A stretch of 64,000 bases of DNA from Macrostomum hystrix (taxonomy: Eukaryota; Animalia; Platyhelminthes): positions 2,294,001 through 2,358,000 of the forward strand of contig CATNEN010000037.1 in assembly GCA_950097015.1 (NCBI GenBank), given 5' to 3'. Positions 5,268-64,000 of the stretch are shown piece by piece. Every line of letters begins with the position of its first letter. The first letter of the stretch is position 1. The notes below the pieces were generated by a model, which worked only from the letters and a program-made list of their open reading frames with translations, did not search any database and was not told the DNA's origin. A program made the position numbers and the translations under genes.

Positions 5268-5477
5268 CAAAAAATGCTTGCCTTTGTTGTTTAAAGATGT
5301 CTGCGAATAAACCCGATAAGAAGAATACTTTGTTAAATAAACCCCTCATCAACCGCCTTATCTCCACATGTCTTCAGTTGGCAACTGGCCAACAATGCCG
5401 GCCCAGTACCAGCCGTGGCCTCGGCAGCTGACGAAAGGCCGCTAAAAGCAGCAACAGCAGCAGTAGCAGCAGCCATT

Positions 5478-5766: not shown

Positions 5767-5797
<31 letters not shown>

Positions 5798-28015: not shown

Positions 28016-28927
28016 CTATTCTCCATGCAGCAACTTCGACTGCTGCCGGTTTGTTCGGGAGATTGCCTGAAAATAGCGCGTGGGAATAGTGAATTGTGAA
28101 TAATTATTCTAATTACCCATTAGAAGCCGGTGTACCCAGCAGACCGGGGTGGGTGTACAGGTTGGGTGGGTTTAACTACTGGCTCACACCCTGTCCCAGC
28201 CACCAGACACCCGCTGTCCCACACCCTGTCCCAGCCACCAGTCACCCGCTGTCCCACACCCTGTCCCAGCCACCAGACACCCGCTGTCCCACACCCTGTC
28301 CCAGCCACCAGACACCCGCAGTTTCACACCCAGCCGCACCTGGCCAATCCTAGGCGGGGTGGAGGCCCTGGGCCGCAGCCGGTACTCGATGACCTGGTCA
28401 TAGAAGCGGTCGAGTTTGACAGCATTGGTGGTGCCGGCGCTGAGGGACCGGGTGTGCACGCAGCTGAGGAGGATCTCCGGGCAGCCGATGCGCACCGCCG
28501 CTTCGCCGCCGTTCTGCCGCCTCGCTAGCGCGTCCGGCTTGCAGAGGTCGCTTTTAGCCCCGATGACTAGGACTGGCGGCGAATCGGCGCCCAGACTGCA
28601 CTCGTGCAGCCAGCGGGTCAGGTTCAACTCCGTCTTTCTGTTGGTGAGGTCGTGCACCAATAGGACGCCGTGTACGCCGTGGTAGAACACTGCCCGACTG
28701 TTCTTGTGCATCGGGTAGCCGCCGATGTCCCAAAACTCGAGGAAGAACAACCGCTCGGCCTGGCCGGTCAGCTCGGAGGCGTAGGCGTGCAGGCCGACCT
28801 GCAGGGAGCAGCCGACAGTCCAGGCCGGATTGGTCAGCTCGCTGTGATTGGTCAGCAGGTGTACAAGTGAAGACTTGCCAACGCCGGAGTCGCCAAGCAC
28901 TAAGATTTTTACTCGCAGAGTGTCCTC
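28016..28927 (-). CDS. RABL3: Rab-like protein 3; exons 28927-28340 and 28066-28016; no genomic ATG found
   Basis: EDTLRVKILVLGDSGVGKSSLVHLL...PAWTVGCS...FWDIGG...RAVFY..VHGVLLVHDLTNRK matches RABL3. Donor CAG|GTGCGG at 28340 and acceptor TTTTCAG| at 28067 give the tail AISRTNRQQSKLLHGE*. Confidence 0.93.
28185..28325. repeat. Minisatellite, 35-bp unit, in the RABL3 intron
   Basis: CACACCCTGTCCCAGCCACCAGACACCCGCTGTCC, about 4 copies. Confidence 0.95.
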
Positions 28928-28965
28928 CTGAGGGCCAATTAATTAATTGGCTCAATTAGTACCCC
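28928..28965 (-). promoter_or_regulatory. Unpaired 3' splice acceptor (putative trans-splice site) of RABL3
   Basis: Minus strand TACTAAT (branch-like)...GGCCCTCAG|GAG; phase 0 with the ORF; no upstream ATG-bearing exon seen. Confidence 0.7.
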
Positions 28966-29039
28966 AAGATGGCATCACCTGTTTAATTACCTCAATTACA
29001 GGTCCTATATTGAATTACCTGTTTAATTACCTTAATTAC

Positions 29040-29730
29040 AGTTCCTAGATTGCATCACCTAATTAACTACCCTAACTAAAGGCCCGAGATTGCATCACCT
29101 AATTAACTACCCTAACTACAGATCCTAGATTGCATCACCTGTTTAACTACCCTAACTACAGGTCCTAGATTGCATCACCTGTTTAACTACCCTAACTACA
29201 GGTCCTAGATTGCATCACCTGTTTAACTACCCTAACTACAGGTCCTAGATTGCACCACCTGTTTAACTACCCTAACTAGAGGTCCTAGATTGCACCACCT
29301 GTTTAACTACCCTAACTACAGGTCCTAGATTGCATCACCTGTTTAACTACCCTAACTACAGGTCCTAGATTGCACCACCTGTTTAACTACCCTAACTACA
29401 GGTCCTAGATTGCATCACCTGTTTAACTACCCTAACTACAGGTCCTAGATTGCATCACCTGTTTAACTACCCTAACTACAGGTCCTAGATTGCACCACCT
29501 GTTTAACTACCCTAACTACAGGTCCTAGATTGCATCACCTGTTTAACTACCCTAACTACAGGTCCTAGATTGCACCACCTGTTTAACTACCCTAACTACA
29601 GGTCCTAGATTGCATCACCTGTTTAACTACCCTAACTACAGGTCCTAGATTGCACCACCTGTTTAACTACCCTAACTACAGGTCCTAGATTGCACCACCT
29701 GTTTAAACACCTGAATTAAAGGTCCTAGAT
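29040..29730. repeat. Minisatellite, 40-bp unit GATTGCATCACCTGTTTAACTACCCTAACTACAGGTCCTA
   Basis: Visible array in the TMEM223-RABL3 spacer; degenerate copies continue to ~28970. Confidence 0.98.
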
Positions 29731-29992
29731 TTAATCACTTATTTATCACACATTTTATAGACGTTTTTATAGACGAAAAGTAAAAATAAGGCGAGCCAAA
29801 GCGAAATGCGAAAAATCTTGCTATGGAAGCATAATTTTAATTACATTCCTAATTGAGACAGATTCTATTTCCTAGATTTTTCGATGAAATTGCCTAAATT
29901 GCCTAAATTGCCTAATATATAGCGAAATTCTAAGCATACTACTAGAAGTCTTAGTAGATAATAAGGAAAACGCGCCAGAATAACTGTTTATT

Positions 29993-30947
29993 TCAAAGCG
30001 TTGCTAACGATTGTTCGCGAATTCGTTTGAACAGCGACGCAAATACGACCGGCTGTTTAATAAAATGCGAGTCCTTAGCAACGGCTAGCAACCGAGGCCT
30101 AGCCGACGAATTGCCGACAGTCGGCAGCTGCTGCACCAGCAGGTGGTTATCGTACAGAGGCGCCATGTCAATCCAGCGCAGCTTAGAAGCCGAGCTAATC
30201 CGCAGCTGATCCAGTCTAATCCGGCGCGCGCCGGTCAAGGTGGCCACGGCCAGGTGCTGCCCGCCTGGCTCCAGGACCAATCGGCGAACGATGCGCAACG
30301 GATGCACCGCGGTGAACAGGCCGGAGACAGCGGCGACCACGCCGAACATGCCGCAGATGAGTAGGCTAGCCGGGCTGCCCAGACTGCTGCTAGGCAGGTA
30401 CCTGGCTATCCAGGAAGCTCCGCTCTCTTCGACATCGTCGGCGTTGTTGCCGTCATCGCCAGCTTCTTCATAGTCGCCGGACATCAGGCGACGCCGCAGA
30501 TTGGCCTCCTCCAGGCTGGCAACTGACCAGCTGTGCCGCAGGTGGTCAAACAGATTATAGAGGCTCAGCAGGGCGATCAAGCCGCTGAGGCAGTGTCGCC
30601 AGTACAGCTTTCTAAAGCCGGCCTCGAACACAAGGACCGGCTCAGTCGGCGCTAGCACAGCAGCGTGAGCATCGTCGTCATCGTCGGGGCTCCGATTGCG
30701 ACTGGACGACGGCGTAATTTCTTTGACTCTGCGAAGCCGGCTGGTCGCGCAGTCGACGCGCCAGACGGCCCAGATCACTGCCGCCGCCGCCGCCGCCGCC
30801 GCCACCGCTAACGAAGCATAGCTGATTGATCTGTGATTGGCCGTGAGCCCGTAGCAGCAGTCTGTACATCTGCCGCTCGCTGCAGACTAGGCGGCAGCGG
30901 AGGGTCCGGCTGGCGCCGATGACTGAAGCGGCTGCTACGCTGAAGGG
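29993..30947 (-). CDS. TMEM223: TMEM223-like mitochondrial inner-membrane protein, single exon, one apparent +1 frameshift near 30686-30689
   Basis: VLVFEAGFRKLYW, two hydrophobic segments, PLRIVRRLVLEPGGQHLAVATL and C-terminal DSHF..PVVF resemble TMEM223 (VLLFEH...SLRSVRSVVLRAGGQQVTL, recalled). The Arg/Ser/Ala-rich N-terminus lies in the neighbouring frame (ORF 30678..31049, ATG 30869). AATAAA immediately follows the stop (29992-29987). Confidence 0.72.
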
Positions 30948-31049
30948 CTGGAAACAGGTGGATTGAACAAAAACTATCCTATCAAGGATAACATTAGCAA
31001 TAATATTTGCAGCGTACCTGAAGCCAGGGATCCACAAGCACACACACAC

Positions 31050-31053
31050 GCGG

Positions 31054-31090
<37 letters not shown>

Positions 31091-31410
31091 AGTCTTATTT
31101 GCAGGAGGGCTGCGGGCAACATCATTTTGTGACACTGGACCTGCAGCCAGCGAGGAGGCAATTCTGCCTAGTTCGCTGACTCCTGAGTACACACGCACAC
31201 GCTCACACAGGTGTGTACATCTGCCCTGATGACTTTCTCACCCATCGTCAGGCAGTGAACACTCTCACTATGACTTGGAGGTTGGCCCTTTAAGGGTGTA
31301 AATTGCACGACAAGCCCCCAAGCCTTCTCTCCGCGGCTGCGGCCCAAAATGAATGTGGCCTCGGCGCGGAATTGAGCTCAGGGACCTTGGTGCGAGAGGC
31401 AGACACCCTA
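31050..31410 (-). mobile_element. tRNA-derived SINE copy with (ATT)n tail
   Basis: Same core as the other copies. B-box-like GAGCTCAATTCC near 31370-31381. 3' end CCCTCCTGCAAAT followed by an (ATT)n run at 31053-31095. Confidence 0.85.
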
Positions 31411-32118
31411 TCCCTATGTAAGGTAAAATATAGTTTATGCGATAAGGAAAACAAAGATACACTAGCCAAATTTATTTACGCTATAAAGCGCAGAAAAAAA
31501 CGCGAAAACAGGCTAATGCGATTGATTAAAAGTCACAAAAGTAATAGAAAAACATTGATTTATTACAACAATTGATAGAAAATAAATCATAAAAATATGC
31601 AAACAAGCAAAAATTACTTCTTATAAAAGAGGTCAATGTTAATGAAATTCAGACAAAGATGGTGCGGAGTCCAAAAAATGTTTATAAGAGGCTGGTGTAC
31701 ATTCAAGTAGTTTATGATAGGCAATGAGAGAATGTACATTGAGAGTGAGCTTAGTGTTAACAGGAGGCTGGTGTACATTTAAGAAGGTTGCGATTGACTA
31801 AGAGCGAGTGTACATTAGGGTACTGAGGTTCAGGTTTGTTAAAAGCTGATGTACATTCAAGCAGGTTGTGATTGGCTAGGAGCGATTCTACATCGGGGTA
31901 GCGTGGTTCAGGTTTGTTAGAGGCTGATGTACATTCGAACGGGTCGTGATTGGGTAGGAGAGAATGTACATTGGAAGTGAGCTTTGAGTTTGTGGGAGGC
32001 TGATCTACATCGCGAACTTAGGTACACTAAAGTGCGGTGCTGTGATTAGCTAGGAGCAAGGTACATGTCATGGATTTGCGGAATGTGCCACATCGGCTAA
32101 GCTGCAAGGATTCATTAA

Positions 32119-35100
32119 TTAAGAGTACCTAGTCCTAGGACAGGCGTGATTATACCGCCTAGCGTGATCCGGCTTATTAAACTGAGTCCTGCACTCGCTG
32201 CCCCAGTGACAATTGGGCCTATTGGCTAGTTCGGCTGGCAGGGCATTGGCCTGCAGTTCGCATCGATAGGCCAGGGCCAGCTCGCGCAGGCACGCCAGGC
32301 CGCAGGAGTAACAGACGGGGGTGTCCGGCTGCACCGGCCGGCTGCAGGTCCAGTCGCCGGAGGCTAAACGGACGCAGCACTCGCGCAGGAGGTCGCGGAC
32401 GCCGAGATCGTTAGCCAGAAGGTAGTCGGTCAGAATCTGGGGGTTGGTTGGGGATCAGATTTGAGTCGTTAGAGGATTGTGAGTCGTTAGAGGATTGTGA
32501 GTCGTTAGAGGATTGTGAGTCGTTAGAGAATTGTGAGTCGTTAGAGGATTGTGAGTCGTTAGAGGATTTTGAGTCGTTAGAGGATTGTGAGTCGTTAGAG
32601 GATTTTGAGTCGTTAGAGGATTGTGAGTCGTTAGAGGATTGTGAGTCGTTAGAAGATTGTGAGTCGTTAGAGGATTGTGAGTCGTTAGAGGATTGTGAGT
32701 CGTTAGAGGATTGTGAGTCGTTAGAGAATTGTGAGTCGTTTAATGATTGTGAGCCGCGAGAGGATTGTGAGTTCTTTGAGGCCCATGAGTCGTTAGAGGA
32801 TTGAGTAGTCAAAATAATTGTAAAGAAAACGTACTTTCGCACCTTGGACTCAACCTGGTTGCCATTGACAACGTCCTCCAATACGCGCCGACCGAAGGTG
32901 AAGTCTTCGAATTCGGCTAGGCAGCCCAGGCAGCCGGGCCGGCGGCAGCCCCAGTAGGCGTGGCAGAAGAAGCGCTGGCAGAGGCCGCACTGGAAGCGCC
33001 GGTTCTCAGGCGGGCACGCTTGATCAGCCCGACGATCCGGGAAGGCCTGCCAGCAGCACTGGCACAGCAGGTGGGCCTGGTTGTCCGGACAGCTGGGAAG
33101 AAACGGGGGGTGAAGCGAAATACGGACTGGAAGGAGACTAAAGACCTGGACTGCACGACAGTAAGAACATAGGATGAGGACAGGCTGATGACAGGATGAG
33201 GACAGGCTGATGACAGGATGAGGACAGGCTGAGGACAGGCTGATGACAGGATGAGGACAGGCTGAGGACAGGCTGATGACAGGATGAGGACAGGATGAGG
33301 ACAGGCTGATGACAGGATGAGGACAGGCTGAGGACAGGCTGATGACAGGATGAGGACAGGCTGAGGACAGGCTGATGACAGGATGAGGACAGGCTGAGGA
33401 CAGGATGAGGACAGGATGATGACAGGATGAGGACAGGCTGATGACAGGATGAGGACAGGCTGAGGACAGGATGAGGACAGGATGAGGACAGGCTGATGAC
33501 AGGATGAGGACAGGCTGAGGACAGGCTGAGGACAGGCTGATGACAGGATGAGGACAGGCTGAGGACAGGCTGATGACAGGATGAGGACAGGATGATGACA
33601 GGATGAGGACAGGCTGAGGACAGGCTGATGACAGGATGAGGACAGGCTGAGGACAGGCTGATGACAGGCTGATGACAGGATGAGGACAGGCTGAGGACAG
33701 GCTGATGACAGGATGAGGACAGGCTGATGACAGGATGAGGACAGGCTGAGGACAGGATGAGGACAGGCTGAGGACAGGCTGATGACAGGATGAGGACAGG
33801 ATGAGGACAGGCTGAGGACAGGCTGATGACAGGATGAGGACAGGCTGATGACAGGATGAGGACAGGCTGAGGACAGGCTGATGACAGGATAAGGGCAGTA
33901 TAAGGGCAGAGAAGGACATATTAAGGAAATGATCAGGACAGGATAAGGATAGGTTAAAAACAGAACAAACAGGATAGTAGAGGCCACTCACACGTGAGCA
34001 ACTTGCAGGGGCTCCCAGCGCAGATCGTCAAAGTGCGGACAGCCATCTGGCTGCTGCTGCTGTTGCTGATGAGGCGCCGGCGGCTGCGGCCGAGCAGCCT
34101 GGTAGCCGGGGCACTGTCTGCAGACATGTCGCAGATGTGGCGGCGTCGCGATTCGATGCAGGGCGTGCACAGCGAAGGCCTGATTTTGTCCTGCGAATGC
34201 GCCAAAGACGCCAACGTAGCCATGGCCGCCGTGGTCATAATCGTCTTCGTCATCGTCGCCTTCTTCACTGTCATTTCCTTCATCGTATTCATCTTCTGCA
34301 GCCGGCGATTGTCTAACCCTAGCGGCTGGGAAGGCCTCCTCGCGACCAATATTGTTGAGCTTGTCAAGCCTGATGCAGTGAGGCAAGTTATAATTAATTC
34401 GAAACATATCGGCTAGCCATTAGTGCTTCGATACATATAGGTTTTTTACTATTTTGTCGATACATGCAGGTCATTTACCATTATTTCTATAAATATCGAC
34501 TACGAACTTGTATTTTGTTATGTATCGGCAAGAATATTTTGATATTTTTCTATACATATCGGCTAGGTAATATTTTTCGATACATATCGGCTAGGTAATA
34601 TTATTTCGATACATATCGGTTAGTTACATAAGTTAGTTCGATACGAAATACATAACTCTCTTTTCTCACCTGTCCAGTTCGTCCTTTGGCCGGCGCCGAT
34701 CCGGATGAAGCGCTAAAAACGCCTCAGCTAGATTAGTTACCAGGGCATTTTTAGTGACCCGGTCAGGTCGGACGCGGCACTGCGGGCAGACCGGATTAGT
34801 CCGGCGCCATTCGCTGTAGCAGCCGGCGCAGTAGCCGTGCAGGCAGGGAATCAGGGTGACGCAGTCGTGAAAGATTTCGCAGCAGATCGAACAGTTCAGA
34901 TTGGCCTCGATGGGGTCTAGTGCGGCTGCTGCAGCAGTTGAGGAAGAGGCAGCGACGTCCGGCTTGTTGACAGTGCTGACAGTTCCGGAGACAGCGACTT
35001 CTGGCGAGCTCTCAATCAATGGAGCTGCAAAATGACAAGTTTGCCAGAATTTGAAATTATATAAATATTTACTACTTGAAACCCACAAGCCTACTATTAG

Positions 35101-35656
35101 TAGAAAAATAGGGACATTTTAGGAACAATAACTGACCAGAACTGATCGAAGATGTTTCCTCTGCAGGCGGCTCTGTTCGAGTCCGTTTTGTCGGCGGAGG
35201 CGAACTGGAAACAGTGGACTCTTGAGCAGCTGGTTGAGCAGCTGGTTGAGCAGGTTCCACAAATTCGCCGCTGTCAATCGGCAGAGTGGAGTCGGAACTG
35301 TTGACAGCATTACCGGTATTAGCTGCCGGTTCTTGATGGCCATTGATTTGCAGTCGGAAGGCCACCGTGGCGTTTCCAGGCAACGGGCAGACTGTGATGA
35401 TGTCATCCTGCTTCAGTTCCGCTACGTCGTTTAGAATGCGCACTCCATTGACTAGGGTGCCATTCATGCTGGTGTCCTGCAGCCAGACGCAGCCCTCAGG
35501 ATCCTTGAATAGGGCGCAGTGGTGTCCGGAGATGTACTGGTTGCCAGGCAGGCTGACATCGCAGTCGGCCGCGCGTCCAATTGAGCACCTATCAGACAGC
35601 AGATCGAGTGCTACACTGCCGTCCGAGCTGTTCAACAGCTGCGCCCACGCGACTGC
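32119..35656 (-). CDS. CHFR: CHFR E3 ubiquitin ligase (FHA - RING - Cys-rich - PBZ); exons 35656-35137, 35024-34670, 34369-33992, 33092-32843, 32436-32119; no genomic ATG found
   Basis: FHA (IGRAADCDV...ISGHHC...DTSMNGT), RING CSICCEIFHDCVTLIPCLHGYCAGC...CPQCR, Cys-rich HLLCQCCWQAFPDRR and C-terminal PBZ CHWGSECRTQFNKPDHARRYNHAC. All four introns are GT-AG with matching phases (1, 2, 2, 0). Confidence 0.94.
32460..32800. repeat. Minisatellite, 18-bp unit GAGTCGTTAGAGGATTGT, filling CHFR intron 4
   Basis: Visible array. Confidence 0.97.
33170..33890. repeat. Compound minisatellite of 10/14-bp modules (GAGGACAGGCT / GATGACAGGAT), CHFR intron 3
   Basis: Visible array with shuffled sub-units. 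Confidence 0.97.
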
Positions 35657-35700
35657 CTAGCGGATGGTTGAGTTTGAGAAGGGAGAGTGAGACTGTGAGG
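35657..35700 (-). promoter_or_regulatory. Unpaired 3' splice acceptor (putative trans-splice site) of CHFR
   Basis: Minus strand CTCACTCTCCCTTCTCAAACTCAACCATCCGCTAG|GCA GTC GCG TGG: pyrimidine tract, phase 0, no in-frame ATG. Confidence 0.65.
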
Positions 35701-35749
35701 GGGAGATGGAGAGAAGGAGGAGGGGGTAGGTTGATGGACAGGGAGGGAA

Positions 35750-36320
35750 GGGAGATGGACAGAGAAGAAAGGGAGATGGACAGGGAGGGAAGGGAGATGG
35801 ACAGAGAAGAAAGGGAGATGGACAGGGAGGGAAGGGAGATGGACAGGGAGGGAAGGAGATGGACAGGGAGGGAAGGGAGATGGACAGGGAGGGAAGGGAG
35901 ATGGATAGAGAAGGAAGGGAGATGGATAGAGAAGGAAGGGAGATGGACAGGGAGGGAAGGGAGATGGATAGAGAAGGAAGGGAGATGGATAGAGAAGGAA
36001 GGGAGATGGATAGAGAAGGAAGGGAGATGGACAGAAAGGGAAGGCAGATGGACAGAGAAGGAAGGGAGATGGACAGAAAGGGAAGGGAGATGGACAGAGA
36101 AGGAAGGGAGATGGACAGAAAGGGAAGGGAGATGGATAGAGAAGGAAGGGAGATGGACAGGGAGGGAAGGGAGATGGATAGAGAAGGAAGGGAGATGGAC
36201 AGAAAGGGAAGGGAGATGGACAGAGAAGGAAGGGAGATGGACAGAAAGGGAAGGGAGATGGATAGAGAAGGAAGGGAGATGGACAGAAAGGGAAGGGAGA
36301 TGGACAGAGAAGGAAGGGAG
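35750..36320. repeat. Minisatellite, 21-bp unit GGAAGGGAGATGGACAGAGAA
   Basis: Visible array in the TAF7-CHFR spacer; pyrimidine-rich on the sense (minus) strand. Confidence 0.97.
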
Positions 36321-36689
36321 AGAAAGTGAGCATCTCTAATTAAAAAAGAGTTTTATTAAACTCGCAAACACTTCGAAATCTGTTTTGCTTGTTAGAAAGT
36401 TTATTTTATAGTATTTATAAAAGCGGAGGCAATTCTCGCAGAATAATTGGAACAGAAATGCACAACACGCGGTGCAAGGGCACTTAAGATGGTGCAAGAA
36501 ACAAGCAGAATTTTATTTTGCAGAACAGGTTAATAATACAAACGACACTGAAAAATTATGCACAGCATAAGCAATGAATAAGATCGCAAGTACTCTCATA
36601 GATTGTGCACTTGGCTTCAGATAAATGTTATAATTTACAAAAGAGGAATTCTGTATGGAAAATGTTTACATTTTAAAGCTATTTGCAGG

Positions 36690-37180
36690 ATTGGGACTAA
36701 TCGATAAATGGGACTATTAGAATCGGGACTAATCGATAAATGGGACAATTAGAGTCGGGACTAATAGATAAATGGGACTATTAGAATCGGGACTAATCGA
36801 TAAATGGGACAATTAGAGTCGGGACTAATCAATAAATGGGACAATTAGAGTCGGGACTAATCAATAAATGGGACAATTAGAATCGGGACTAATCGATAAA
36901 TGGGACAATTAGAGTCGGGACTAATAGATAAATGGGACTATTAGAATCGGGACTAATCGATAAATGGCACAATTAGAGTCGGGACTAATCGATAAATGGG
37001 ACTATTTTACAATCGGGACTAATCGATAAATGGGACTATTTTACAATCGGGACTAATCGATAAATGGGACTATTTTACAATCGGGACTAATCGATAAATG
37101 GGACTATTACAATCGGGACTAATCGATAAATGGGACTATTACAATCGGGACTAATCGATAAATGGAACTATTACAATCGA
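36690..37180. repeat. Minisatellite, ~32-bp unit CGGGACTAATCGATAAATGGGACTATTAGAAT
   Basis: Visible array beginning ~30 bp after the TAF7 stop codon. Confidence 0.96.
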
Positions 37181-37211
37181 GAGCAATTATAGAACGAGTG
37201 TCAAGCGAGCT

Positions 37212-38514
37212 TCACTCGAAGCTGGCCAGAACGTCAGCTGACTCGTCCAGCTCCTCGTCTTCTTCAGCTTCCTCCTCTTCCTCATCGTCTTCCACCAGAT
37301 CCTCTCGTTCGTCATTGTTATCCGGCTCATTGTCGGGCGCATCGCCGGCCGCTGCTGCTTCGCCCAAGTCGCCGACTTCCTCGTTATCAGACGCGGAAGA
37401 GGAAGCCGAGGAAGAGGAGTCACTGATGTCGCCGAAGAGCTGAGTGGTCGTCATGAGGTTATTGCCACCGCCGCTGCCCGGTGCAGCATCATTTTTGGAA
37501 TCTGGCTGCTGCTGCTGCTGCTGCTGAGTAGCTGCTGAGTCTAATTTCGCAGCTTCTTCTTCAGTTAGGACCTAGAAAAAAACGAAGAAAATTTTTTTTT
37601 TACCTGTGACGAAGATCCCGGGTTCGAATCCTCAGAATGTGGCGTCAGAGTGGTTGAGTTGGAGAGAAGGCTTGGGGGCTTATCGTCCAAGGCACAGTGA
37701 GAGTGTACACTGCCTGACGATGAGAAAGTCAGGGCAGATGTACCTGTGTGAGTGTGTGTCTGCGTACACTATCTGTGTGCGTGTGTGCTCAGGAGTCAGC
37801 GAAATGGGCAGAATTGCCACCTCGCTAGCTGCGGGTCTAGTGTCACCAAATGTTGTGCCATTGCCCCCAGCCCTCCTGCAATTATTATTATTATCCTCAG
37901 AATGTTGTACAAACAGGCCTCACCTCGCACTTGACATCGAAAGCCTCGGCGTCGTTGCGTAGCAACCGTTTAACCTCTCTCTCCAGGTCGGGCATGTCCA
38001 GGCTGCGATTGCGCAATATCCGGCGGAAGCGCCGCTTTCTGACATTCTTCAACGGCGGCGTCAGGCCGTGGTCCCATTGGTGCGCGCGCTCCTCCGCCGT
38101 TGGCACCACCGTAGCCGAAGTCGACTCTGATCGGCGACGATCTCTGCGACGCAACGTCGACGGCGACGGCAAATCGGCGACGAATTCTCGGCCGCAAATC
38201 AGCATCTGGGTGATGTTGGCCACCTTGTAGAAGGTGCGCGAGTCGGCGGTCTTGTGCGCCTCGACAATGCAGGGCAGGTCGACCAGGCGGCCTGGGAGGC
38301 TCTCGCCATCGTAGGCGAGGACGAAGTTGCGCAGATCCTGGCGAGCCTCAAGGCTGAGGTGATCGTGCAGCTGGACGCCGGACTCGATGTCGGCGCGTAG
38401 GCGGTCGGCGATCGGCTGCGGCAGTCGAAGAATCATGCACTGCTCCGGCTCCACCGGGGCGTGGCCGCGAAGCTGCGGAGTCTGCTGCTGCTGCTGCTGC
38501 TGCTGCTGCGACAT
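37212..38514 (-). CDS. TAF7: TFIID subunit 7; exons 38514-37924 and 37571-37212
   Basis: EQCMILRLP, RLVDLPCIVEAHKTADSRTFYKVANITQMLIC, HGLTPPLKNVRKRRFR and EREVKRLLRND are TAF7 hallmarks. GAG|GTGAGG donor and TTTTCTAG| acceptor, phase 0; acidic exon 2. Acceptor TTTCTTTCAG ends at 38526, 11 nt before the ATG. Confidence 0.94.
37641..37892 (+). mobile_element. SINE copy (internally deleted head) in the TAF7 intron
   Basis: Shared core and (ATT)n tail; 13-bp target-site duplication ATCCTCAGAATGT (37628-37640, 37893-37905). Confidence 0.88.
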
Positions 38515-38562
38515 TGCACTTTAAGCTGAAAGAAACATTTCTTCTCATTCTTAATTCTCTCA

Positions 38563-38770
38563 CTGATGACACCTGATAATCCGATCCCCAATGACACACC
38601 TGATAATCCGATCCCTAATGACACACCTGATAATCCGATCCCTAATGACACACCTGACAATCCGATCCCTAATGACACACCTGACAATCCGATCCCTAAT
38701 GACACACCTGATAATCCGATCCCTAATGACACACCTGATAATCCGATCCCTAATGACACACCTGATAATC
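38563..38770. repeat. Minisatellite, 27-bp unit GATAATCCGATCCCTAATGACACACCT
   Basis: Visible array ~35 bp upstream of the TAF7 acceptor. Confidence 0.96.
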
Positions 38771-39332
38771 GGTGGCACAATTAGCTTCCTCTAGTCAGCT
38801 CATACTAGGTTGCTTTATTTTTCTGTATTAACTGCACTAAATCATCAACACAGACAGTCTAAAAATAGGTTCTATTATAAAAGGGCAATAAAAGCAGCAA
38901 GCTTTCTATTTAAACAGTTGAGGATTAGAAAAAATGTTTGGAAAAACTCAATAATGGCCTCTAAAAATAGAATTGAATCAAGGAAACAGGATGTAATCCC
39001 AGTTGGATCGAAGAAGCATAAGAAGAAAGAGCTTGGTATAGTTGGCGACGATTTCAACTTGGTTGTCAGCGGATGGAGACAGAATGAGGGAAGCTGGATT
39101 CGCATCCGGGATAGGGAGAGTTGAAAAAAAACACAATAACAACAGCCAGCAGGAATCGTCTGTTAATAGTTATAGATAGTTCGGCCTGCAAACAATTTGA
39201 GGGAATTGAGTGAATGCGGAAAACTTTTTGCTTCCTTTGATTTGATTGAAGAAAGAGAAAATGGGAGAGAAGAGGAGAGAGAAGAGAAAAGAGAAACGGT
39301 GGGAGAGGACAAGAAGGTGGCAGAGGAGAGAT

Positions 39333-42300
39333 TCGATAAATAATGCTATCCCTCGATAAATGATGCTACTCTTCGATAAATGATGCTACCCTTCGATAAA
39401 TAATGCTACCCTTCGATAAATGATGCTACCCTTCGATAAATAATGCTACCCTTCGATAAATGATGCTACTCTTCGATAAATGATGCTATCCTTCGATAAA
39501 TGATGCTACTCTTCGATAAATAATGCTACCCTTCGATAAATGATGCTACTCTTCGATAAATGATGCTACTCTTCGATAAATGATGCTACTCTTCGATAAA
39601 TGATGCTATCCTTCGATAAATGATGCTACCCTTCGATAAATGATGCTACCCTTCGATAAATGATGCTACCCTTCGATAAATGATGCTACTCTTCGATAAA
39701 TGATGCTACCCTTCGATAAATAATGCTACCCTTCGATAAATGATGCTACCCTTCGATAAATAATGCTATCCCTCGATAAATGATGCTACTCTTCGATAAA
39801 TAATGCTACTCTTCGATAAATGATGCTACCCTTCGATAAATAATGCTACTCTTCGATAAATGATGCTTCTCTTCGATAAATGATGCTACCCTTCGATAAA
39901 TAATGCTGCCCTTCGATAAATAATGCTACCCTTCGATAAATAATGCTACCCTTCGATAAATAATGCTATCCCTCGATAAATAATGCTACTCTTCGATAAA
40001 TAATGCTACCCTTCGATAAATGATGCTACCCTTCGATAAATAATGCTACCCTTCGATAAATAATTCTATCCCTCGATAAATGATGCTACTCTTCGATAAA
40101 TAATGCTACTCTTCGATAAATGATGCTACCCTTCGATAAATGATGCTACTCTTCGATAAATGATGCTACCCTTCGATAAATAATGCTACCCTTCGATAAA
40201 TAATTCTATCCCTCGATAAATGATGCTACTCTTCGATAAATGATGCTACTCTTCGATAAATGATGCTACTCTTCGATAAATGATGCTACCCTTCGATAAA
40301 TAATGCTACCCTTCGATAAATGATGCTACCCTTCGATAAATAATGCTACCCTTCGATAAATGATGCTACCCTTCGATAAATGATGCTACTCTTCGATAAA
40401 TAATGCTACACTTCGATAAATAATGCTACCCTTCGATAAATGATGCTACCCTTCGATAAATGATGCTACTCTTCGATAAATGATGCTACCCTTCGATAAA
40501 TAATGCTACTCTTCGATTAATGATGCTACTCTTCGATAAATGATGCTACTCTTCGATAAATAATGCTACCCTTCGATAAATGATGCTACCCTTCGATAAA
40601 TGATGCTACTCTTCGATAAATGATGCTACCCTTCGATAAATAATGCTACCCTTCGATAAATGATGCTACCCTTCGATAAATAATGCTACCCTTCGATAAA
40701 TGATGCTACCCTTCGATAAATGATGCTACTCTTCGATAAATGATGCTACCCTTCGATAAATAATGCTACTCTTCGATAAATGATGCTACTCTTCGATAAA
40801 TGATGCTATCCTTCGATAAATGATGCTACCCTTCGATAAATGATGCTACCCTTCGATAAATAATGCTACCCTTCGATAAATAATGCTATCCCTCGATAAA
40901 TAATGCTACTCTTCGATAAATAATGCTATCCTTCGATAAATGATGCTACCCTTCGATAAATGATGCTACCCTTCGATAAATAATGCTACCCTTCGATAAA
41001 TAATGCTACCCTTCGATAAATAATGCTACCCTTCGATAAATAATGCTACCCTTCGATAAATGATGCTACCCTTCGATAAATAATGCAAACCCCTCGATAA
41101 ATAATGCTATCCCTCGATAAATAATGCTATCCCTCGATAAATAATGCTATCCCTCGATAAATAATGCTATCCCTCGATAAATAATGCTAACCCTTCGGTA
41201 AATGATGCTATCCCTCGATAAATAATGCTACCCTTCGATAAATGATGCTATCCCTTCGATAAATAATGCTACCCTTCGATAAATAATGCTACCCTTCGAT
41301 AAATGATGCTACCCTTCGATAAATGATGCTACTCTTCGATAAATAATGCTACACTTCGATAAATAATGCTACCCTTCGATAAATGATGCTACCCTTCGAT
41401 AAATGATGCTACTCTTCGATAAATGATGCTACCCTTCGATAAATAATGCTACTCTTCGATAAATGATGCTACTCTTCGATAAATGATGCTACTCTTCGAT
41501 AAATAATGCTACCCTTCGATAAATGATGCTACCCTTCGATAAATGATGCTACTCTTCGATAAATGATGCTACCCTTCGATAAATAATGCTACCCTTCGAT
41601 AAATGATGCTACCCTTCGATAAATAATGCTACCCTTCGATAAATGATGCTACCCTTCGATAAATGATGCTACTCTTCGATAAATGATGCTACCCTTCGAT
41701 AAATAATGCTACTCTTCGATAAATGATGCTACTCTTCGATAAATGATGCTATCCTTCGATAAATGATGCTACCCTTCGATAAATGATGCTACCCTTCGAT
41801 AAATAATGCTACCCTTCGATAAATAATGCTATCCCTCGATAAATAATGCTACTCTTCGATAAATAATGCTATCCTTCGATAAATGATGCTACCCTTCGAT
41901 AAATGATGCTACCCTTCGATAAATAATGCTACCCTTCGATAAATAATGCTACCCTTCGATAAATAATGCTACCCTTCGATAAATAATGCTACCCTTCGAT
42001 AAATGATGCTACCCTTCGATAAATAATGCAAACCCCTCGATAAATAATGCTATCCCTCGATAAATAATGCTATCCCTCGATAAATAATGCTATCCCTCGA
42101 TAAATAATGCTATCCCTCGATAAATAATGCTAACCCTTCGGTAAATGATGCTATCCCTCGATAAATAATGCTACCCTTCGATAAATGATGCTATCCCTCG
42201 ATAAATAATGCTATCCCTCGATAAATAATGCTATCCCTCGATAAATAATGCTATCCCTCGATAAATAATGCTAACCCTTCGGTAAATGATGCTATCCCTC

Positions 42301-43149: not shown

Positions 43150-59757
<16,608 letters not shown>

Positions 59758-60074
59758 AGTGCGGATGGATAACTGAATATTCTTTGATCTGCAAACGGAA
59801 ATATTGAGGAGAAATCTGATTTTAAATCAATTTTTGTAGGCCATGCGATTTGATAATCCATTTTCAAAATATCGTTTGCGGGATTTTGGATTTTAAAGTA
59901 ATTATTGATCTAACTATTCTTTGGGACTTAAATGGATTACAAAAATATATAGATAGATTAAAATCTTATTAGGAAATTTAAGGGATTACTTATAAAAAAA
60001 TCTTTGGGGATGTTAAGGAATTACGAATTGAAACCCCAACGGAGATATTAAAGTATTGTGGATTGAAATCTCAG

Positions 60075-60600
60075 TGGAATGTAAAGTGATTACTGATTCA
60101 AATCTCAGTGGGATGTTAAAGGATTACTGATTCAAATCTCAGTGGGATGTAAAGTGATTACTGATTCAAATCTCAGTGGGATGTTAAAGGATTACTGATT
60201 CAAATCTCAGTGGGATGTAAAGTGATTACTGATTCAAATCTCAGTGGGATGTTAAGTGATTACTGATTCAAATCTCAGTGGGATGTAAAGTGATTACTGA
60301 TTCAAATCTCATTGGGATGTAAAGTGATTACTGATAAAAATCTAACTGTGGATGTTAGGGATTACTGATAAAAATCTAATTGAGTATGTTAAAGGATTAC
60401 TGATAAAAATCTAATTGAGGATGTTAAGGGATTACTGATAAAATCTAACTGAGGATGTTAAGGGATTACTGATAAAATCTAACTGAGGATGTTAAGGGAT
60501 TACTGATAAAATCTAACTGAGGATGTTAAGGGATTACTGATAGAAATCTAATTGAGGATGTTAAGGGATTACTGATTAAAATCTAATTAAGGATGTTAAT
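60075..60600. repeat. Two related 32-34-bp minisatellite sub-arrays (GATTACTGAT...AATCT...GGATGTTAA)
   Basis: Visible; the unit changes around 60330. Confidence 0.93.
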
Positions 60601-61439
60601 AGATTACGGATCAAATATCGTTTGTGATTTAAATAATTATGTTCCACGTTTGTGAAAGATGAGAAATACAAACGTATTGTAATTGTACCGGTGATTCTCT
60701 ATTAAATAAAAGCGTTTGTTTTGTATGGAACTAAAATTATCCAGCTATATTTACACCTTTGTCCGACAGACCTTTAAATAGAAACAATGAATGGCAAAAC
60801 TGGTATAAAATATTTTCTTCACTATAGCCAGAAAGCAAGTACGTTAAAAGTACTTCTACTCTAATTGATTGCCTTGCCACTATGTAAGCCGCTTTTATCA
60901 TCAAACAAACCTACTTTTTGTTCTGCCGTCAAGCGAGATAAAAGTACACTAACCAGTCACTGCAAAAAACATGAATCTAAATATTCTGTTGGCCCAGTGT
61001 GCTCAAGTGCGAGTACTCAAGTGCGAACGCACCCATCCCCTTACTACTGCTGAGGAAGAGGAGTAAGGGCAGTGAGAACTGAGACCAGCCTGCGTGAGTG
61101 TTCTATTCCTGTCCTTAAAATCAGGACTAAGCTGCAAATAAATGCTAGAGAACGCAACTGTGATTGGTGGGCAACAGCAAATAAGAGTGTAGGTTGTACT
61201 TTAAGGGTTGCGAGTCTGAGAAATAGAGACACCAGAAAACTGATAAACAAGAAGGCACGCGCCATAAAATTACATTAACTCTATAACAGCCATAGAAAAA
61301 TGGTGGAATTTGTTGACTGAGCTAATCCCTGATCCTCAGGTAGCACTTGAAACTCACAAGCCTAGAGAAATTTTTTTTCGGAGCTGCGAACGATGATTTA
61401 GGGATTTTGGGGGGGGTGACACAGGGGGTTTTAGGGGTG

Positions 61440-61860
61440 ACACGTTGATTTTAGGGATGAAATGTTGATTTTAGGGATGACATGTTGATTTTAGGGATGA
61501 AATGTTGATTTTAGGGATGAAATGTTGATTTTAGGGATGAAATGTTGATTTTAGGGATGAAATGTTGATTTTAGGGGTGACATGTTGATTTTAGGGGTGA
61601 CATGTTGATTTTAGGGATGAAATGTTGATTTTAGAGATGACATGTTGATTTTAGGGATGACATGTTGATTTTAGGGATGAAATGTTGATTCTAGGGATGA
61701 AATGTTGATTTTAGGGGTGACATGTTGATTTTAGGGATGAAATGTTGAATTTTGGGGTGATATGTTGATTTTAGGGGTGACATGTTGATTTTAGGGGTGA
61801 CATGTTGATTTTAGGGGTGACATGTTGATTTTAGGGGTGAAATGTTGATTTTAGTGGTGA
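61440..61860. repeat. Minisatellite, 20-bp unit ATGTTGATTTTAGGGATGAA/C
   Basis: Visible array. Confidence 0.97.
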
Positions 61861-62619
61861 CAAAAATAATTTTTGCTGTGGAAACGATGATTTCGGACAG
61901 AATTATTTTTTACAACAATGACCTATCATAATGTAATTTTCATAGCGTTATTTTTATTTCTTGAATTAAAAAGAAAAAAGTGCTAAAATTAAAAATTTCT
62001 AGCAAACAATTGAGTAGCAATTCAACATTACACTCGGCTCATACATATAAAGTACAATAGAGAATGCTGGAAGGTCGATACGCTGCTGAAACAAAAGCCC
62101 TTAGTCTGGAGCTAAGTTAGTACCAAAGTGTACTCTTATAGGTCTGTACTCTCTTTAGGCGCGGAGAAGGGAATTGTCTAGAACTAAATTAGATGCAGCA
62201 CTGGCGGGCAGAAAATTAAAATAGCAAAGACAGTGGCGGAGATGTTCCATTCATTGTTGCAGGCAAATTTATGTAACAATGCTTTATGCAATTTATTTAC
62301 TCATTTGCACTTATTGCCATAACAAATTGATTAAGATCAAGTCATTTTAAGAAAAGAATTATGAGTATCAGTATGAGAATGAGTAAAAAAGGACTAACAA
62401 ATAACTGTTTATATCGACACACATTAACATTAGACAAAAGCACAAGATGATAAAAACTAGAAGCACAACACTAAACCATATGAAAGTAGATCATGAAAGT
62501 AAAGGTTTAAAGTTACAAATTTGATCGAAACAATGCATTAACTATAATAAGGCAGAGTACTACAATATGCGATCAATTTTTTTTTGTTTGTTCAAGACTG
62601 TATGAACATGAACTCTAGG

Positions 62620-62900
62620 GTAAGAGGTTGCGGAGTTGATCAGGAGTGGGTACGTACATCGGGGGTAAGAGGTTGCGGAGTTGACCAGGAGTGCGTACGT
62701 ACATCGGGGGTAAGAGGTTGCGGAGTTGACCAGGAGTGCGTATGTACATTGGGGTAAGAGGTTGCGGAGTTGACCAGGAGTGCGTATGTACATCGGGGTA
62801 AGAGGTTGCAGAGTTGACCAGGAATGCGTATGTACATTGGGGAAAGAGATTGCGGAGTTGGTCAGGAGTGCGTATATGTACATCGGGGTAAGAGTTTGCG
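62620..62900. repeat. Minisatellite, 44-45-bp unit (GGGGTAAGAGGTTGCGGAGTTGACCAGGAGTGCGTATGTACAT)
   Basis: About 6 visible copies. Confidence 0.94.
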
Positions 62901-63765
62901 GAGTTAGATTGGTGTGTGCACACTAGGGTAAGATATTTCGGCGCTGGCCGGAGTATACCAAATACTAAAATTATTTTCTACAGGATTTTTGTGCGGCACA
63001 AAAATTTGATGACTGATCAAGCTTTATAACGAACTTTTTATTTTACGTAGCTTAATACAGAACGTTTTAAGCGTTGCTTGGAAATGCTATTCTTATCACT
63101 TCTTATTACTTTTTGCCTATCCGATATTTCGAGCGTAAACAGAAGCGATAATGTACACTACAATGTGCGAGCATCGACTTGCGCAAGCATAAAATCAAAG
63201 CTCTTTTTTTAAGAATGGCATTGAATAACAAGACTCAGAATTTTCTTAGCAAACTCTAACAACAGTGTGGCGAAAATGAATAACAACAGCAGCTTAACTA
63301 CTTGATGAGAGTTTAAACAACATTAAGTAAAAAGTAGTTCTAGTTAAAATATACACGTCAATCAGACATCCGAATACAGTCTGTTGCTAATCTTTCGACT
63401 AAGAAAGTAAGCATTTATTGACAAAAGAAAAGGTAATGAAGCACAGAAACACTGGCATTAGATAATACACAGACAAATATAGAAATGAAAGATTAGCAAA
63501 GTTAACCTGCGTTGCTAACGAATGTATTTAAAAGTGCATTGTCAACATTTTTAGAAACAGCTGAGTGGAATATATTTTATCAGACTGATAAAATTCTTCC
63601 TTAATAAGAGTACAATCTAACAGAAGATTGTAGCAAAAATGCTTGCATTGACTTGTGTTGGTTGGTGGAAACCATTTCCGAGACTATGTTTCATGACACA
63701 CGTCAGAATTTGTGAGGGCTTCGCAAAGAACAATGTCCAACTTAAGCCATGTAATTAGCTCAGGG

Positions 63766-64000
63766 CTACTGCAACCTTGGCCTCTTCCTTGGCGGCCCAA
63801 GCGGCGGCGTGGCCTGCATTGCCAGGGCTTTGAAGGCCTCCGCAACCAGGTGCGGCTGCCGCCGTACCATCTGGGCCCAGCCAGCCGACTCTGTCACTTC
63901 GTTGGCGTGGCAGAGCAGGTAGTCACAGGCGTGCTGGCGCAACTGCTCGGCCGAGTGAAGGTCGGCCAGCACTAGACAGTCGCAGACGTTTTCCACAGTC
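63766..64000 (-). CDS. SPOP: SPOP/roadkill-like BTB Cul3 adaptor, last exon (partial, enters from the right edge)
   Basis: ENVCDCLVLADLHSAEQLRQHACDY...HPHLVAEAF-like segment and terminal NLS LGPPRKRPRLQ match the SPOP BACK-like region and C-terminus. Confidence 0.88.
   Translation of the reverse strand, partial: TVENVCDCLVLADLHSAEQLRQHACDYLLCHANEVTESAGWAQMVRRQPHLVAEAFKALAMQATPPLGPPRKRPRLQ

What the first reader, a model, noticed from the sequence alone, without database searches (positions are those of the whole stretch)
28016..64000. Six conserved genes in one orientation: candidate SL-resolved polycistronic operon SPOP-TOP3B-TAF7-CHFR-TMEM223-RABL3
Seen: all six are on the minus strand with stop-to-next-acceptor gaps of about 4.0, 4.6, 1.6, 1.2 and 1.1 kb, much of it minisatellite or SINE filler. 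Each downstream gene has a 3' acceptor at or just before its coding start (59773 or 59789, 38526, 35657, 30948, 28928) with no visible upstream donor exon. Established: SL trans-splicing and operons occur in flatworms. Inference: one or a few polycistronic units linking genome-stability and proteostasis genes (topoisomerase, checkpoint E3, Cul3 adaptor), a TFIID subunit and a mitochondrial membrane protein. I know of no description of this particular cluster.
Basis: partly seen in the sequence, partly recalled or inferred. Interest (0 to 1): 0.78.

Follow-up and report, generated by a model that had tools for sequence, protein, structure and literature searches.

The report
Trans-spliced flatworm gene cluster, probably part operon
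Six ordinary housekeeping genes sit head-to-tail in a Macrostomum flatworm genome, and at least the last two receive the known spliced leader, which also supplies their start codon. This is a typical, already described kind of Macrostomum operon rather than a new system.

Summary
SPOP (last exon only), TOP3B, TAF7, CHFR, a TMEM223-like gene and RABL3 all lie on the minus strand. The stop-to-acceptor gaps are 3976, 4623, 1554, 1170 and 1064 nt, mostly minisatellite or SINE.

RNA contigs from three runs carry the Macrostomum spliced leader (…GCGAAGACTCAATTTATTGCATG) joined exactly at 28928 (RABL3). One listed loose end plus two 24-25 nt overhangs place it at 30948 (TMEM223-like). The leader's AUG completes both reading frames. 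CHFR also opens at its acceptor without an ATG, here and in M. lignano.

The window is not the M. lignano reference, but M. lignano keeps the order TOP3B-TAF7-CHFR-TMEM223-RABL3. Its annotation names TMEM223 and RABL3 as g1 and g2 of one transcriptional unit, in two copies.

After removing repeats, the three short spacers leave about 90-250 nt of unique sequence. That meets the published M. lignano operon criterion. TOP3B→TAF7 is borderline and SPOP→TOP3B fails (2.7 kb unique).

No RNA contig bridges a spacer, so co-transcription is inferred, not shown. Leader addition at CHFR, TAF7 and TOP3B was not tested with reads.

Verdict: a new member of a known kind. It is most likely a TMEM223-RABL3 operon, possibly reaching up to TAF7. 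One six-gene unit is unlikely.

The parts
63766..64000 (-). Last coding exon of a SPOP-family gene (BACK domain end plus a PPRKRPR tail). The stop codon is at 63768-63766; the rest of the gene lies outside the window.
   Evidence: Sequence read. Pfam BACK_BPM_SPOP E 2.7e-5, below cut-off because only 77 aa are present.
59790..63765 (.). Spacer S1, SPOP stop to TOP3B acceptor, 3976 nt. It holds three minisatellites (60061-60584, 61429-61862, 62618-62905). 2730 nt are not tandem repeat, and the spacer is AT-rich.
   Evidence: No interspersed repeat was detected within the window. It fails the <1 kb repeat-adjusted criterion.
43150..59789 (-). TOP3B, 16.6 kb. Candidate acceptors are at 59789 (TTGCAG) and 59773 (ATTCAG). 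It has its own ATG at 59757-59755, an RGG tail, and a stop at 43152-43150. The introns hold minisatellites, SINE copies and a LINE fragment.
   Evidence: Pfam Toprim, Topoisom_bac and Zn_ribbon_TOP3B across ordered exons; sequence. SL use was not tested with reads.
38527..43149 (.). Spacer S2, TOP3B stop to TAF7 acceptor, 4623 nt. Of this, 3243 nt is one 20-mer minisatellite (39332-42574, 162 copies) and 202 nt a 27-mer array. 1178 nt are non-repeat, including the TOP3B 3' UTR.
   Evidence: Borderline for the 1 kb criterion.
37212..38526 (-). TAF7. The acceptor TTTCAG ends at 38526, the gene's own ATG is at 38514, exon 1 ends at 37924, one intron holds a SINE copy, and the stop is at 37214-37212.
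   Evidence: Pfam TAFII55_N E 1e-42; sequence. It is 75% identical to M. lignano TAF7, which also has a TTTCAG acceptor 24 nt before its ATG. SL use was not tested with reads.
35658..37211 (.). Spacer S3, TAF7 stop to CHFR acceptor, 1554 nt. It holds a 32-mer array (36693-37179) and a CT-rich 21-mer array (35733-36321). About 477 nt are non-repeat, including the TAF7 3' UTR, with AATAAA signals at about 36515, 36405 and 36355.
32119..35656 (-). CHFR (FHA, RING, zf-CRD, C-terminal PBZ-like finger). The reading frame opens at 35656, directly after the AG at 35657, which itself forms an in-frame TAG. There is no genomic ATG. The stop is at 32121-32119 and the 3' UTR reaches about 31540.
   Evidence: Pfam; sequence. 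The intron 32437-32842 is spliced in RNA contigs. The M. lignano orthologue also opens exactly at an acceptor.
30949..32118 (.). Spacer S4, CHFR stop to TMEM223 acceptor, 1170 nt. It contains the CHFR 3' UTR, a SINE-like element at 31096-31406 and (TAA)n at 31054-31091. From poly(A) site to acceptor is about 590 nt, of which about 240 nt are unique.
   Evidence: (contigs end near 31631; depth in bin 31401-31600 fits an end near 31540).
29846..30947 (-). TMEM223-like mRNA, a single exon. The SL is joined at 30948/30947 and its AUG starts a 318-codon frame. The stop is at 29995-29993 and the 3' end at about 29846-29859. The genome carries one extra base at 30715 relative to all RNA contigs.
   Evidence: SL loose end in X5, 24-25 nt overhangs in X3 and X4, and '1 left out' at 30715 in all three runs; the frame is restored and both halves align to the M. 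lignano orthologue. Searches give the family leads.
28929..29845 (.). Intercistronic region S5, TMEM223 3' end to RABL3 acceptor, 917 nt. Of this, 779 nt is a 40-mer minisatellite (28967-29745), leaving about 138 nt of unique sequence.
   Evidence: RNA contig depth is 0 at 29401-29800 and traces (0.4-1.9) at 29001-29400.
27876..28927 (-). RABL3 mRNA. The SL is joined at 28928/28927 and its AUG gives MEDTLRVKILVLGDSGVGKS…. The intron is 28066-28338 (GT..AG), the stop 28018-28016, and the poly(A) site about 27876. The protein is 213 aa.
   Evidence: the same SL loose end in X3, X4 and X5, the joint 28065>28339 in all three, and a T-run loose end at 27876; 93% identical to M. lignano RABL3.

Best explanation
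This is a conserved, co-oriented block of housekeeping genes in a Macrostomum species other than the M. lignano reference. Its members are matured by trans-splicing of the single Macrostomum spliced leader.

Shown: the leader is joined at 28928 (RABL3) and at 30948 (TMEM223-like). Its terminal AUG is the only start codon available to both genes.

Inferred: CHFR works the same way. TAF7 and TOP3B have their own ATG and use the strong acceptors just upstream of it.

Most likely mechanism: TMEM223-like and RABL3 are transcribed as one precursor. That precursor is cut by 3'-end formation of the upstream gene and SL addition to the downstream one. The unit probably extends upstream through CHFR to TAF7, because those spacers shrink to about 90-250 nt of unique sequence once minisatellites and a SINE are discounted. 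TOP3B may or may not belong. SPOP most likely has its own unit, with the TOP3B promoter or outron lying in the 2.7 kb of unique spacer.

In short, the block is one to three polycistronic units of the kind already described genome-wide in M. lignano, not one six-gene operon.
For: 1. Spliced leader. One search shows the loose end ATGCAATAAATTGAGTCTTCGC on the + strand. This is the reverse complement of GCGAAGACTCAATTTATTGCAT, the 3' part of the published M. lignano SL. It sits at 28928 in three runs, and at 30948 in X5, with 24-25 nt overhangs in X3 and X4. No copy of this sequence exists in the window, so it is added in trans.

2. Reading frames. Adding ATG at these acceptors gives conserved full-length proteins of 213 and 318 aa.

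3. CHFR. Its frame opens directly after an acceptor with no ATG, in this genome and in M. lignano.

4. Synteny. M. lignano scaffold NIVC01002410.1 has TOP3B-TAF7-CHFR-TMEM223-RABL3 in the same order and strand, followed by a convergent gene. A second copy is on NIVC01002993.1.

5. Transcriptional-unit names. M. lignano names TMEM223 and RABL3 Mlig000840g1/g2, and Mlig015061g1/g2 in the second copy. The prefix denotes the transcriptional unit from which genes were cut using SL and poly(A) data.

6. Distances. Repeat-adjusted stop-to-acceptor distances are 477, 929 (618 without the SINE) and 256 nt here. In M. lignano they are 615, 506 and 465 nt. The published threshold is 1 kb and the mode about 100 bp.

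7. Conservation. Between the two species only exons align. Conservation starts at the acceptors, and no conserved block is present in any spacer.
Against: - No RNA contig bridges any spacer; depth is zero at 29401-29800. Contigs cannot exclude rare precursors.
- M. lignano CHFR (Mlig022451g4) and TAF7 (Mlig026986g7/g9) carry transcriptional-unit prefixes different from each other and from TMEM223/RABL3.
- Contig depth of CHFR (about 8-10) is 2-5 times lower than that of TMEM223 (23-33) and RABL3 (38-51) in all three runs. This hints at an extra promoter or different mRNA stability, but the tool warns that depth is a poor measure.
- Macrostomum has one SL for all targets, so SL addition does not by itself distinguish an operon from a monocistronic gene with an outron. 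About 60% of SL genes in M. lignano are not in operons.
- If the SL were joined at 38526, its AUG would open a long out-of-frame ORF over the TAF7 start. The true TAF7 acceptor is therefore uncertain.
Confidence: 0.6

Rival explanations
1. All the genes are separate transcription units. Each spacer holds its own promoter, and each primary transcript starts with an outron that is replaced by the spliced leader. Co-orientation is inherited synteny with no shared transcription.
For: About 60% of SL trans-spliced genes in M. lignano are outside operons, and one SL serves both classes. No bridging RNA contig was seen, and steady-state depths are unequal. CHFR and TAF7 have separate transcriptional-unit names in M. 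lignano. Raw spacers are 1-4.6 kb. In M. lignano, regions up to 2 kb upstream suffice as promoters.
Against: TMEM223 and RABL3 share a transcriptional-unit name in two M. lignano copies. Only about 138 nt of unique sequence lies between the TMEM223 3' end and the RABL3 acceptor, and about 240 nt before the TMEM223 acceptor. No spacer sequence is conserved between the species. The authors of the operon survey note that transcriptional units tend to break in repeat-rich spacers.
Confidence: 0.3
2. This is the reader's maximal version: a single six-gene operon. One promoter upstream of SPOP drives a primary transcript of at least 36 kb that is resolved into six mRNAs.
For: All six genes are co-oriented with no opposite-strand gene in any spacer. 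Strong acceptors lie close to the TOP3B and TAF7 start codons. Operons of up to nine genes are reported in M. lignano.
Against: SPOP→TOP3B keeps 2730 nt of non-repeat sequence and TOP3B→TAF7 keeps 1178 nt, against a 1 kb threshold. SL use at TOP3B and TAF7 is untested. SPOP-TOP3B linkage could not be checked in M. lignano. In the second M. lignano copy no TOP3B exon lies within 10 kb upstream of TAF7. Three different transcriptional-unit prefixes cover TAF7, CHFR and TMEM223/RABL3.
Confidence: 0.07

Closest known systems
Macrostomum lignano SL-resolved operons (Ustyantsev & Berezikov 2021, PMC8629364; transcriptional units of Wudarski et al. 2017, PMC5730564)
   Same: It uses the same 35-nt leader ending in ATG, and the same YTNCAG-type acceptors at TMEM223, TAF7 and TOP3B (59789). 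The genes are conserved housekeeping genes. Intergenic distances are inflated by repeats and collapse to a few hundred nt after repeat subtraction. The orthologous TMEM223-RABL3 pair is already annotated as one transcriptional unit in M. lignano.
   Different: It comes from a different Macrostomum species: exon identity to M. lignano is 66-89%, and spacers and introns do not align. The minisatellites in the spacers are unrelated in sequence. TMEM223 uses the SL AUG here but has a genomic ATG in M. lignano. Co-transcription was not observed directly here.
Caenorhabditis elegans operons
   Same: Co-oriented housekeeping genes are resolved by 3'-end formation plus SL addition. The unique intercistronic sequence is of the order of 100-250 nt.
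   Different: There is no specialised SL2-type leader; the same leader is found on both tested genes. Raw intercistronic distances are 0.6-0.9 kb (and up to 4.6 kb if TOP3B belongs) because of minisatellite and SINE insertions.
Flatworm SL 3'-terminal AUG used as initiator methionine (Cheng et al. 2006, J Biol Chem 281:733, as cited in PMC12582326)
   Same: The leader ends in AUG. In RABL3, TMEM223-like and (inferred) CHFR it is in phase with a frame that has no ATG of its own.
   Different: Translation from the SL AUG was not tested here. Three ATG-less genes in a row, and a switch between genomic and SL-donated start codon between two congeners, are details not taken from that work.
Candidate operons of parasitic flatworms (PMC12582326; Schistosoma mansoni median intercistronic distance 99 bp)
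   Same: The operational definition is the same: same strand, short distance, SL on the downstream gene, and the pair conserved between species.
   Different: That study uses a threshold of 300 bp or less on raw distance, and none of the spacers here meets it without repeat subtraction. None of these gene pairs was looked for among the conserved operons of that paper.

Membership tests
Macrostomum SL-resolved operon (criteria of PMC8629364) | Adjacent genes on the same strand, not interrupted by an opposite-strand transcript | tested here: met
   All six genes are on the minus strand. No plus-strand ORF with a family hit lies in any spacer. Opposite-strand elements (a LINE fragment, a noted nested gene) lie only inside TOP3B introns.
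Macrostomum SL-resolved operon (criteria of PMC8629364) | Downstream gene carries the spliced leader | tested here: met
   Met for RABL3 (28928, three runs) and TMEM223-like (30948, one listed loose end plus two overhanging contigs). For CHFR the evidence is indirect only (an ATG-less frame opening at the acceptor in two species).
Macrostomum SL-resolved operon (criteria of PMC8629364) | Repeat-adjusted intergenic distance below 1 kb | tested here: inconclusive
   Met for TAF7→CHFR (≤477), CHFR→TMEM223 (≤618; about 240 from the poly(A) site) and TMEM223→RABL3 (≤256; about 138 from the 3' end). Borderline for TOP3B→TAF7 (1178 including the 3' UTR). Not met for SPOP→TOP3B (2730).. Only tandem repeats and one SINE family could be masked; no genome-wide repeat library was available.
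Macrostomum SL-resolved operon (criteria of PMC8629364) | One promoter and a polycistronic precursor RNA | tested here: inconclusive
   No contig bridges a spacer, but assembled contigs of mature-RNA libraries drop rare precursors. Indirect support: the M. lignano orthologues of TMEM223 and RABL3 share one transcriptional-unit name in two copies, whereas CHFR and TAF7 do not. Promoter mapping is not possible with these tools.
C. elegans-type operon | Specialised downstream leader (SL2) and raw intercistronic distance of about 100 nt | tested here: not met
   The same leader 3' sequence is on both tested genes and equals the general M. lignano SL. Raw distances from 3' end to acceptor are about 590 and 917 nt.
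SL-donated initiator AUG (flatworms) | The leader ends in AUG, and the recipient frame starts at the acceptor, in phase, with no genomic ATG | tested here: met
   The leader ends …TTGCATG. For RABL3 and TMEM223-like the RNA junctions place the ATG in phase with conserved proteins. For CHFR the evidence is from sequence in two species only.
SL-donated initiator AUG (flatworms) | Translation actually initiates at the SL AUG | not testable with these tools
   This needs N-terminal proteomics, ribosome profiling or reporter assays.

The most novel reading that the evidence does not exclude
All six genes (or at least TOP3B to RABL3) form one conserved operon of more than 30 kb. Its intercistronic regions have been inflated to 1-4.6 kb by rapidly turning-over minisatellites in two Macrostomum species, without breaking co-transcription. 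The genes have also handed their start codons to the leader to different degrees in different species: TMEM223 has a genomic ATG in M. lignano and the SL AUG here. That would make it one of the largest flatworm operons. It would also be a natural test of how much junk an intercistronic region can tolerate.
Probability: 0.1. Interest if true: 0.5.

Novelty: new member of a known kind. Interest (0 to 1): 0.27.

Why it matters
The cluster is a clean worked example of three things already described for Macrostomum. Its value is for annotation and comparison rather than as a new mechanism.

1. Gene models that look 5'-truncated (RABL3, CHFR, TMEM223-like) are complete once the leader's AUG is added. 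Annotation pipelines should not flag them as partial.
2. Kilobase spacers between SL genes can hide operon-like intercistronic regions of only 100-250 unique nucleotides.
3. Order and orientation are conserved between two congeners whose non-coding DNA no longer aligns.

The switch of the TMEM223 start codon between genomic and leader-donated is a small but concrete case of start-codon outsourcing evolving within a genus.

Tried and rejected
- I looked for this species' own transcripts in the protein collection using TAF7 exon 1, RABL3 exon 1 and the CHFR zf-CRD region. Only M. lignano relatives came back at 75-93%. The planned route to Logan RNA contigs for the CHFR, TAF7 and TOP3B 5' ends therefore failed.
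- I searched the window for an SL RNA gene and found none. An Rfam scan of 26-64 kb found nothing at gathering score.
- A whole-window repeat search was swamped by minisatellites and was uninformative, apart from one 142-nt inverted pair that belongs to the SINE family. A TRF-masked self-BLAST worked instead.
- I searched papers and the operon paper's supplements for the M. lignano gene identifiers and found no mention.
- I looked for the SL sequences of M. cliftonense and M. hystrix in the supplements of PMC10468722 to name the species. They were not held as text. The species is left as 'Macrostomum, not the M. lignano reference'.
- I considered that the extra base at 30715 might mean a pseudogene. 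This is rejected: all RNA contigs lack it, and both half-frames align to the M. lignano protein.
- I considered the minus-strand ORF 26765-27508 as a seventh member. It has no M. lignano counterpart and only a faint QRICH1 hit, so it is left open.


Full report
**What is there**

- RABL3: Roc/Ras.
- TMEM70/186/223-family protein: weak, E 1.3e-3. It is supported as a lead by ESM-Atlas clusters named TM223 at 0.91.
- CHFR: FHA, RING and zf-CRD, plus a PBZ-like C-terminal finger read.
- TAF7: TAFII55_N, E 1e-42.
- TOP3B: Toprim, Topoisom_bac, Zn_ribbon_TOP3B and an RGG tail, spread over 16.6 kb.
- SPOP-type gene: the last 77 codons only (BACK_BPM_SPOP E 2.7e-5).

Stop-to-acceptor gaps are 3976, 4623, 1554, 1170 and 1064 nt. 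Tandem repeats make up 31, 75, 69, 21 and 76% of them. The CHFR→TMEM223 gap also contains a 311-nt SINE-like element with four more copies in the window.

**RNA evidence**

The run search returned four runs of one study that hold about half the words of 28000-34000. Laid on 27801-33800, three of them (X3, X4, X5) behave as RNA. Their contigs skip 28066-28338 and 32437-32842, with GT..AG ends on the minus strand.

At 28928 all three runs carry the loose end ATGCAATAAATTGAGTCTTCGC on the + strand. This is the reverse complement of GCGAAGACTCAATTTATTGCAT. At 30948 the same loose end is listed for X5, and the X3 and X4 contigs overhang that position by 25 and 24 nt.

This sequence is the 3' part of the published M. 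lignano leader CGGTCTCTTACTGCGAAGACTCAATTTATTGCATG (PMC8629364). It does not occur in the window, so it is added in trans.

With the leader's ATG:
- RABL3 reads MEDTLRVKILVLGDSGVGKS… and closes after 213 codons.
- The TMEM223-like gene reads MPFSV… and closes after 318 codons, once the base at 30715 is dropped. All RNA contigs lack that base.
- Both halves of the TMEM223-like frame align to the M. lignano orthologue. The extra base is therefore an assembly error or an allele, not a pseudogene.

The 3' ends are as follows:
- RABL3 ends at about 27876, where there is a T-run loose end.
- TMEM223 ends at about 29846-29859.
- CHFR contigs reach 31631, and the depth in the next bin fits an end near 31540, just after the AATAAA at 31564-31559.

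No contig bridges a spacer. Depth is zero at 29401-29800.

**Acceptors not covered by reads**

*CHFR.* Its frame starts at 35656. The acceptor AG at 35657 is part of an in-frame TAG, and no ATG precedes the FHA domain. In M. lignano the annotated (partial) CHFR coding sequence likewise begins immediately after CACCTACAG, and RABL3 after CCGGCACAG. The M. lignano gene boundaries were set from SL-read peaks. I therefore take SL addition at CHFR as strongly inferred.

*TAF7 and TOP3B.* Both have their own ATG, 12 nt and 16 or 32 nt downstream of good acceptors (TTTCAG; ATTCAG or TTGCAG). M. lignano TAF7 also has a TTTCAG, 24 nt upstream of its ATG.
- A leader joined at 59773 would be in frame with TOP3B.
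- A leader joined at 38526 would open a long out-of-frame ORF across the TAF7 start, so that site is uncertain.
- I could not test these sites. Also, this species' transcripts are absent from the protein collection.

**Whose genome, and synteny**

The best protein matches are M. lignano proteins at 75% (TAF7) and 93% (RABL3, CHFR zf-CRD). There is no identical entry. Exons align to M. lignano at 66-89% nucleotide identity, while introns and spacers do not align at all. The window therefore comes from another Macrostomum species. Assemblies of M. cliftonense and M. hystrix exist (PMC10468722); I could not tell which, if either, it is.

M. lignano scaffold NIVC01002410.1 carries TOP3B, TAF7, CHFR, a 314-aa TMEM223-like gene and RABL3 in the same order and strand. 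They are followed by convergent genes, the farther of which is the orthologue of the window's plus-strand LRR gene. A second copy lies on NIVC01002993.1.

Conservation between the species begins at the acceptors. No spacer block is conserved.

**Evidence bearing on co-transcription**

1. *Transcriptional-unit names.* In the M. lignano annotation the name prefix marks the assembled transcriptional unit, and the g-numbers mark the genes cut from it with SL and poly(A) data (PMC5730564).
   - TMEM223 and RABL3 are Mlig000840g1 and g2 on one scaffold, and Mlig015061g1 and g2 on the other.
   - Two unrelated neighbours sharing a prefix in two copies means one assembled precursor.
   - This is an inference from the naming rule, but a direct one.
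   - CHFR is Mlig022451g4 and TAF7 is Mlig026986g7/g9, which are different units.
   - The operon survey warns that such units break in repeat-rich spacers.

2. *Distance criterion.* That survey defines operons as same-strand SL genes with a repeat-adjusted distance below 1 kb, with a mode near 100 bp.

| Spacer | This window, stop to acceptor minus tandem repeats (nt) | M. lignano (nt) |
|---|---|---|
| SPOP→TOP3B | 2730 | not available |
| TOP3B→TAF7 | 1178 | 1294 |
| TAF7→CHFR | 477 | 615 |
| CHFR→TMEM223 | 929 (618 without the SINE) | 506 |
| TMEM223→RABL3 | 256 | 465 |

   Measured from the RNA 3' ends, only about 240 nt and about 138 nt of unique sequence precede the TMEM223 and RABL3 acceptors. 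From the candidate TAF7 poly(A) signals, about 90-250 nt precede the CHFR acceptor (sequence).

3. *Against co-transcription.*
   - Contig depth of CHFR is 2-5 times lower than that of the two downstream genes (a poor measure).
   - One leader serves operonic and monocistronic genes alike.
   - About 60% of SL genes in M. lignano are not operonic.

**Conclusion**

The most likely reading (0.6) is a TMEM223-RABL3 operon that probably extends upstream to CHFR and TAF7. TOP3B is uncertain and SPOP is separate.
- Fully independent promoters with outrons is the main rival (0.3).
- A single six-gene operon is unlikely (0.07).
- The suggested functional theme has no support. Operon partners in metazoans are generally unrelated housekeeping genes (my own knowledge), and the survey reports only that SL genes are enriched for conserved genes.

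**Comparison with what is known**

Leader, acceptor motif, repeat-inflated spacers and gene type all match the M. lignano operons already described (PMC8629364). SL-AUG initiation in flatworms is known (Cheng et al. 2006, as cited in PMC12582326). This is a new member of a known kind. The specific cluster is not discussed in any searchable paper, but it is present and partly annotated as polycistronic in the public M. lignano genome.

One small new detail concerns TMEM223. It has a genomic ATG in M. lignano (…gcatgcccATGCCAAGC) but relies on the leader's AUG here. Both proteins start MP.

**Limits**

Spliced protein models were never sent to a search tool; exons were searched singly, by reference. 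Joined frames were only checked inside local scripts.

Noticed in passing
window 30715: The genome has one base more than every RNA contig of three runs. With it the TMEM223-like frame breaks after 90 codons; without it the frame is a 318-codon ORF whose two halves both align to the M. lignano orthologue. It is probably an assembly indel or an allele.
   Followed up: yes
window 30947 versus L003:7532: The TMEM223-like gene takes its start codon from the spliced leader here, but has a genomic ATG in M. lignano. Both proteins begin MP. This is a start-codon switch between congeners.
   Followed up: partly
window 31096-31406; also 19105-19386, 37686-37884, 45794-46001, 58744-58969: A SINE-like interspersed repeat has at least five copies in the window, in a spacer, in the TAF7 intron and in TOP3B introns. 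RNA contig depth over it is 400-3400, far above the flanking genes. There is no Rfam or tRNA match at gathering score.
   Followed up: partly
window 44855-45646 (+): A plus-strand ORF with RNase H and zf-RVT hits. It is a non-LTR retrotransposon fragment inside a TOP3B intron, antisense to the gene.
   Followed up: no
window 26765-27508 (-): A 247-codon ATG ORF lies 368 nt downstream of the RABL3 poly(A) site on the same strand. It has a faint QRICH1-domain hit (E 0.003) and no counterpart in the M. lignano loci. It may be transposon-derived or lineage-specific.
   Followed up: partly
window 32033-32102: RNA contigs of X3, X4 and X1 skip 70 nt just after the CHFR stop, with non-canonical ends (TG..GC), whereas an X5 contig reads straight through. 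It looks like a length variant of the 3' UTR rather than an intron.
   Followed up: no
P0158 (UniProt A0A1I8FKN3, M. lignano): An 826-aa gene model fuses a TAF7 N-terminal region with CHFR FHA and RING domains. It is only 42% identical to the window's CHFR zf-CRD. It is either a chimeric model across a TAF7-CHFR pair at a diverged paralogous locus, or a messy prediction.
   Followed up: partly
window 43436-43812 versus L001:9513-9930: A 28-30-mer minisatellite of the same family sits in the last TOP3B intron here, but directly upstream of the TAF7 acceptor in M. lignano. It is the only non-coding similarity between the two loci.
   Followed up: no
window 1-27000: The neighbouring genes have mixed orientation. 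They are an NB-ARC/CARD (APAF1-like) ORF at 521-1990 (-), a nuclear-receptor DNA-binding domain at 5415-6479 (+) and ligand-binding domain at 18517-19188 (+), and an LRR gene at 23929-26630 (+). The LRR gene converges on RABL3 and is orthologous to the convergent gene in M. lignano.
   Followed up: partly
run X1 (organism A): A 2024 run filed under a different organism code holds RABL3, TMEM223 and CHFR exon contigs at 99-100% identity. It therefore contains the same species or a very close strain.
   Followed up: no
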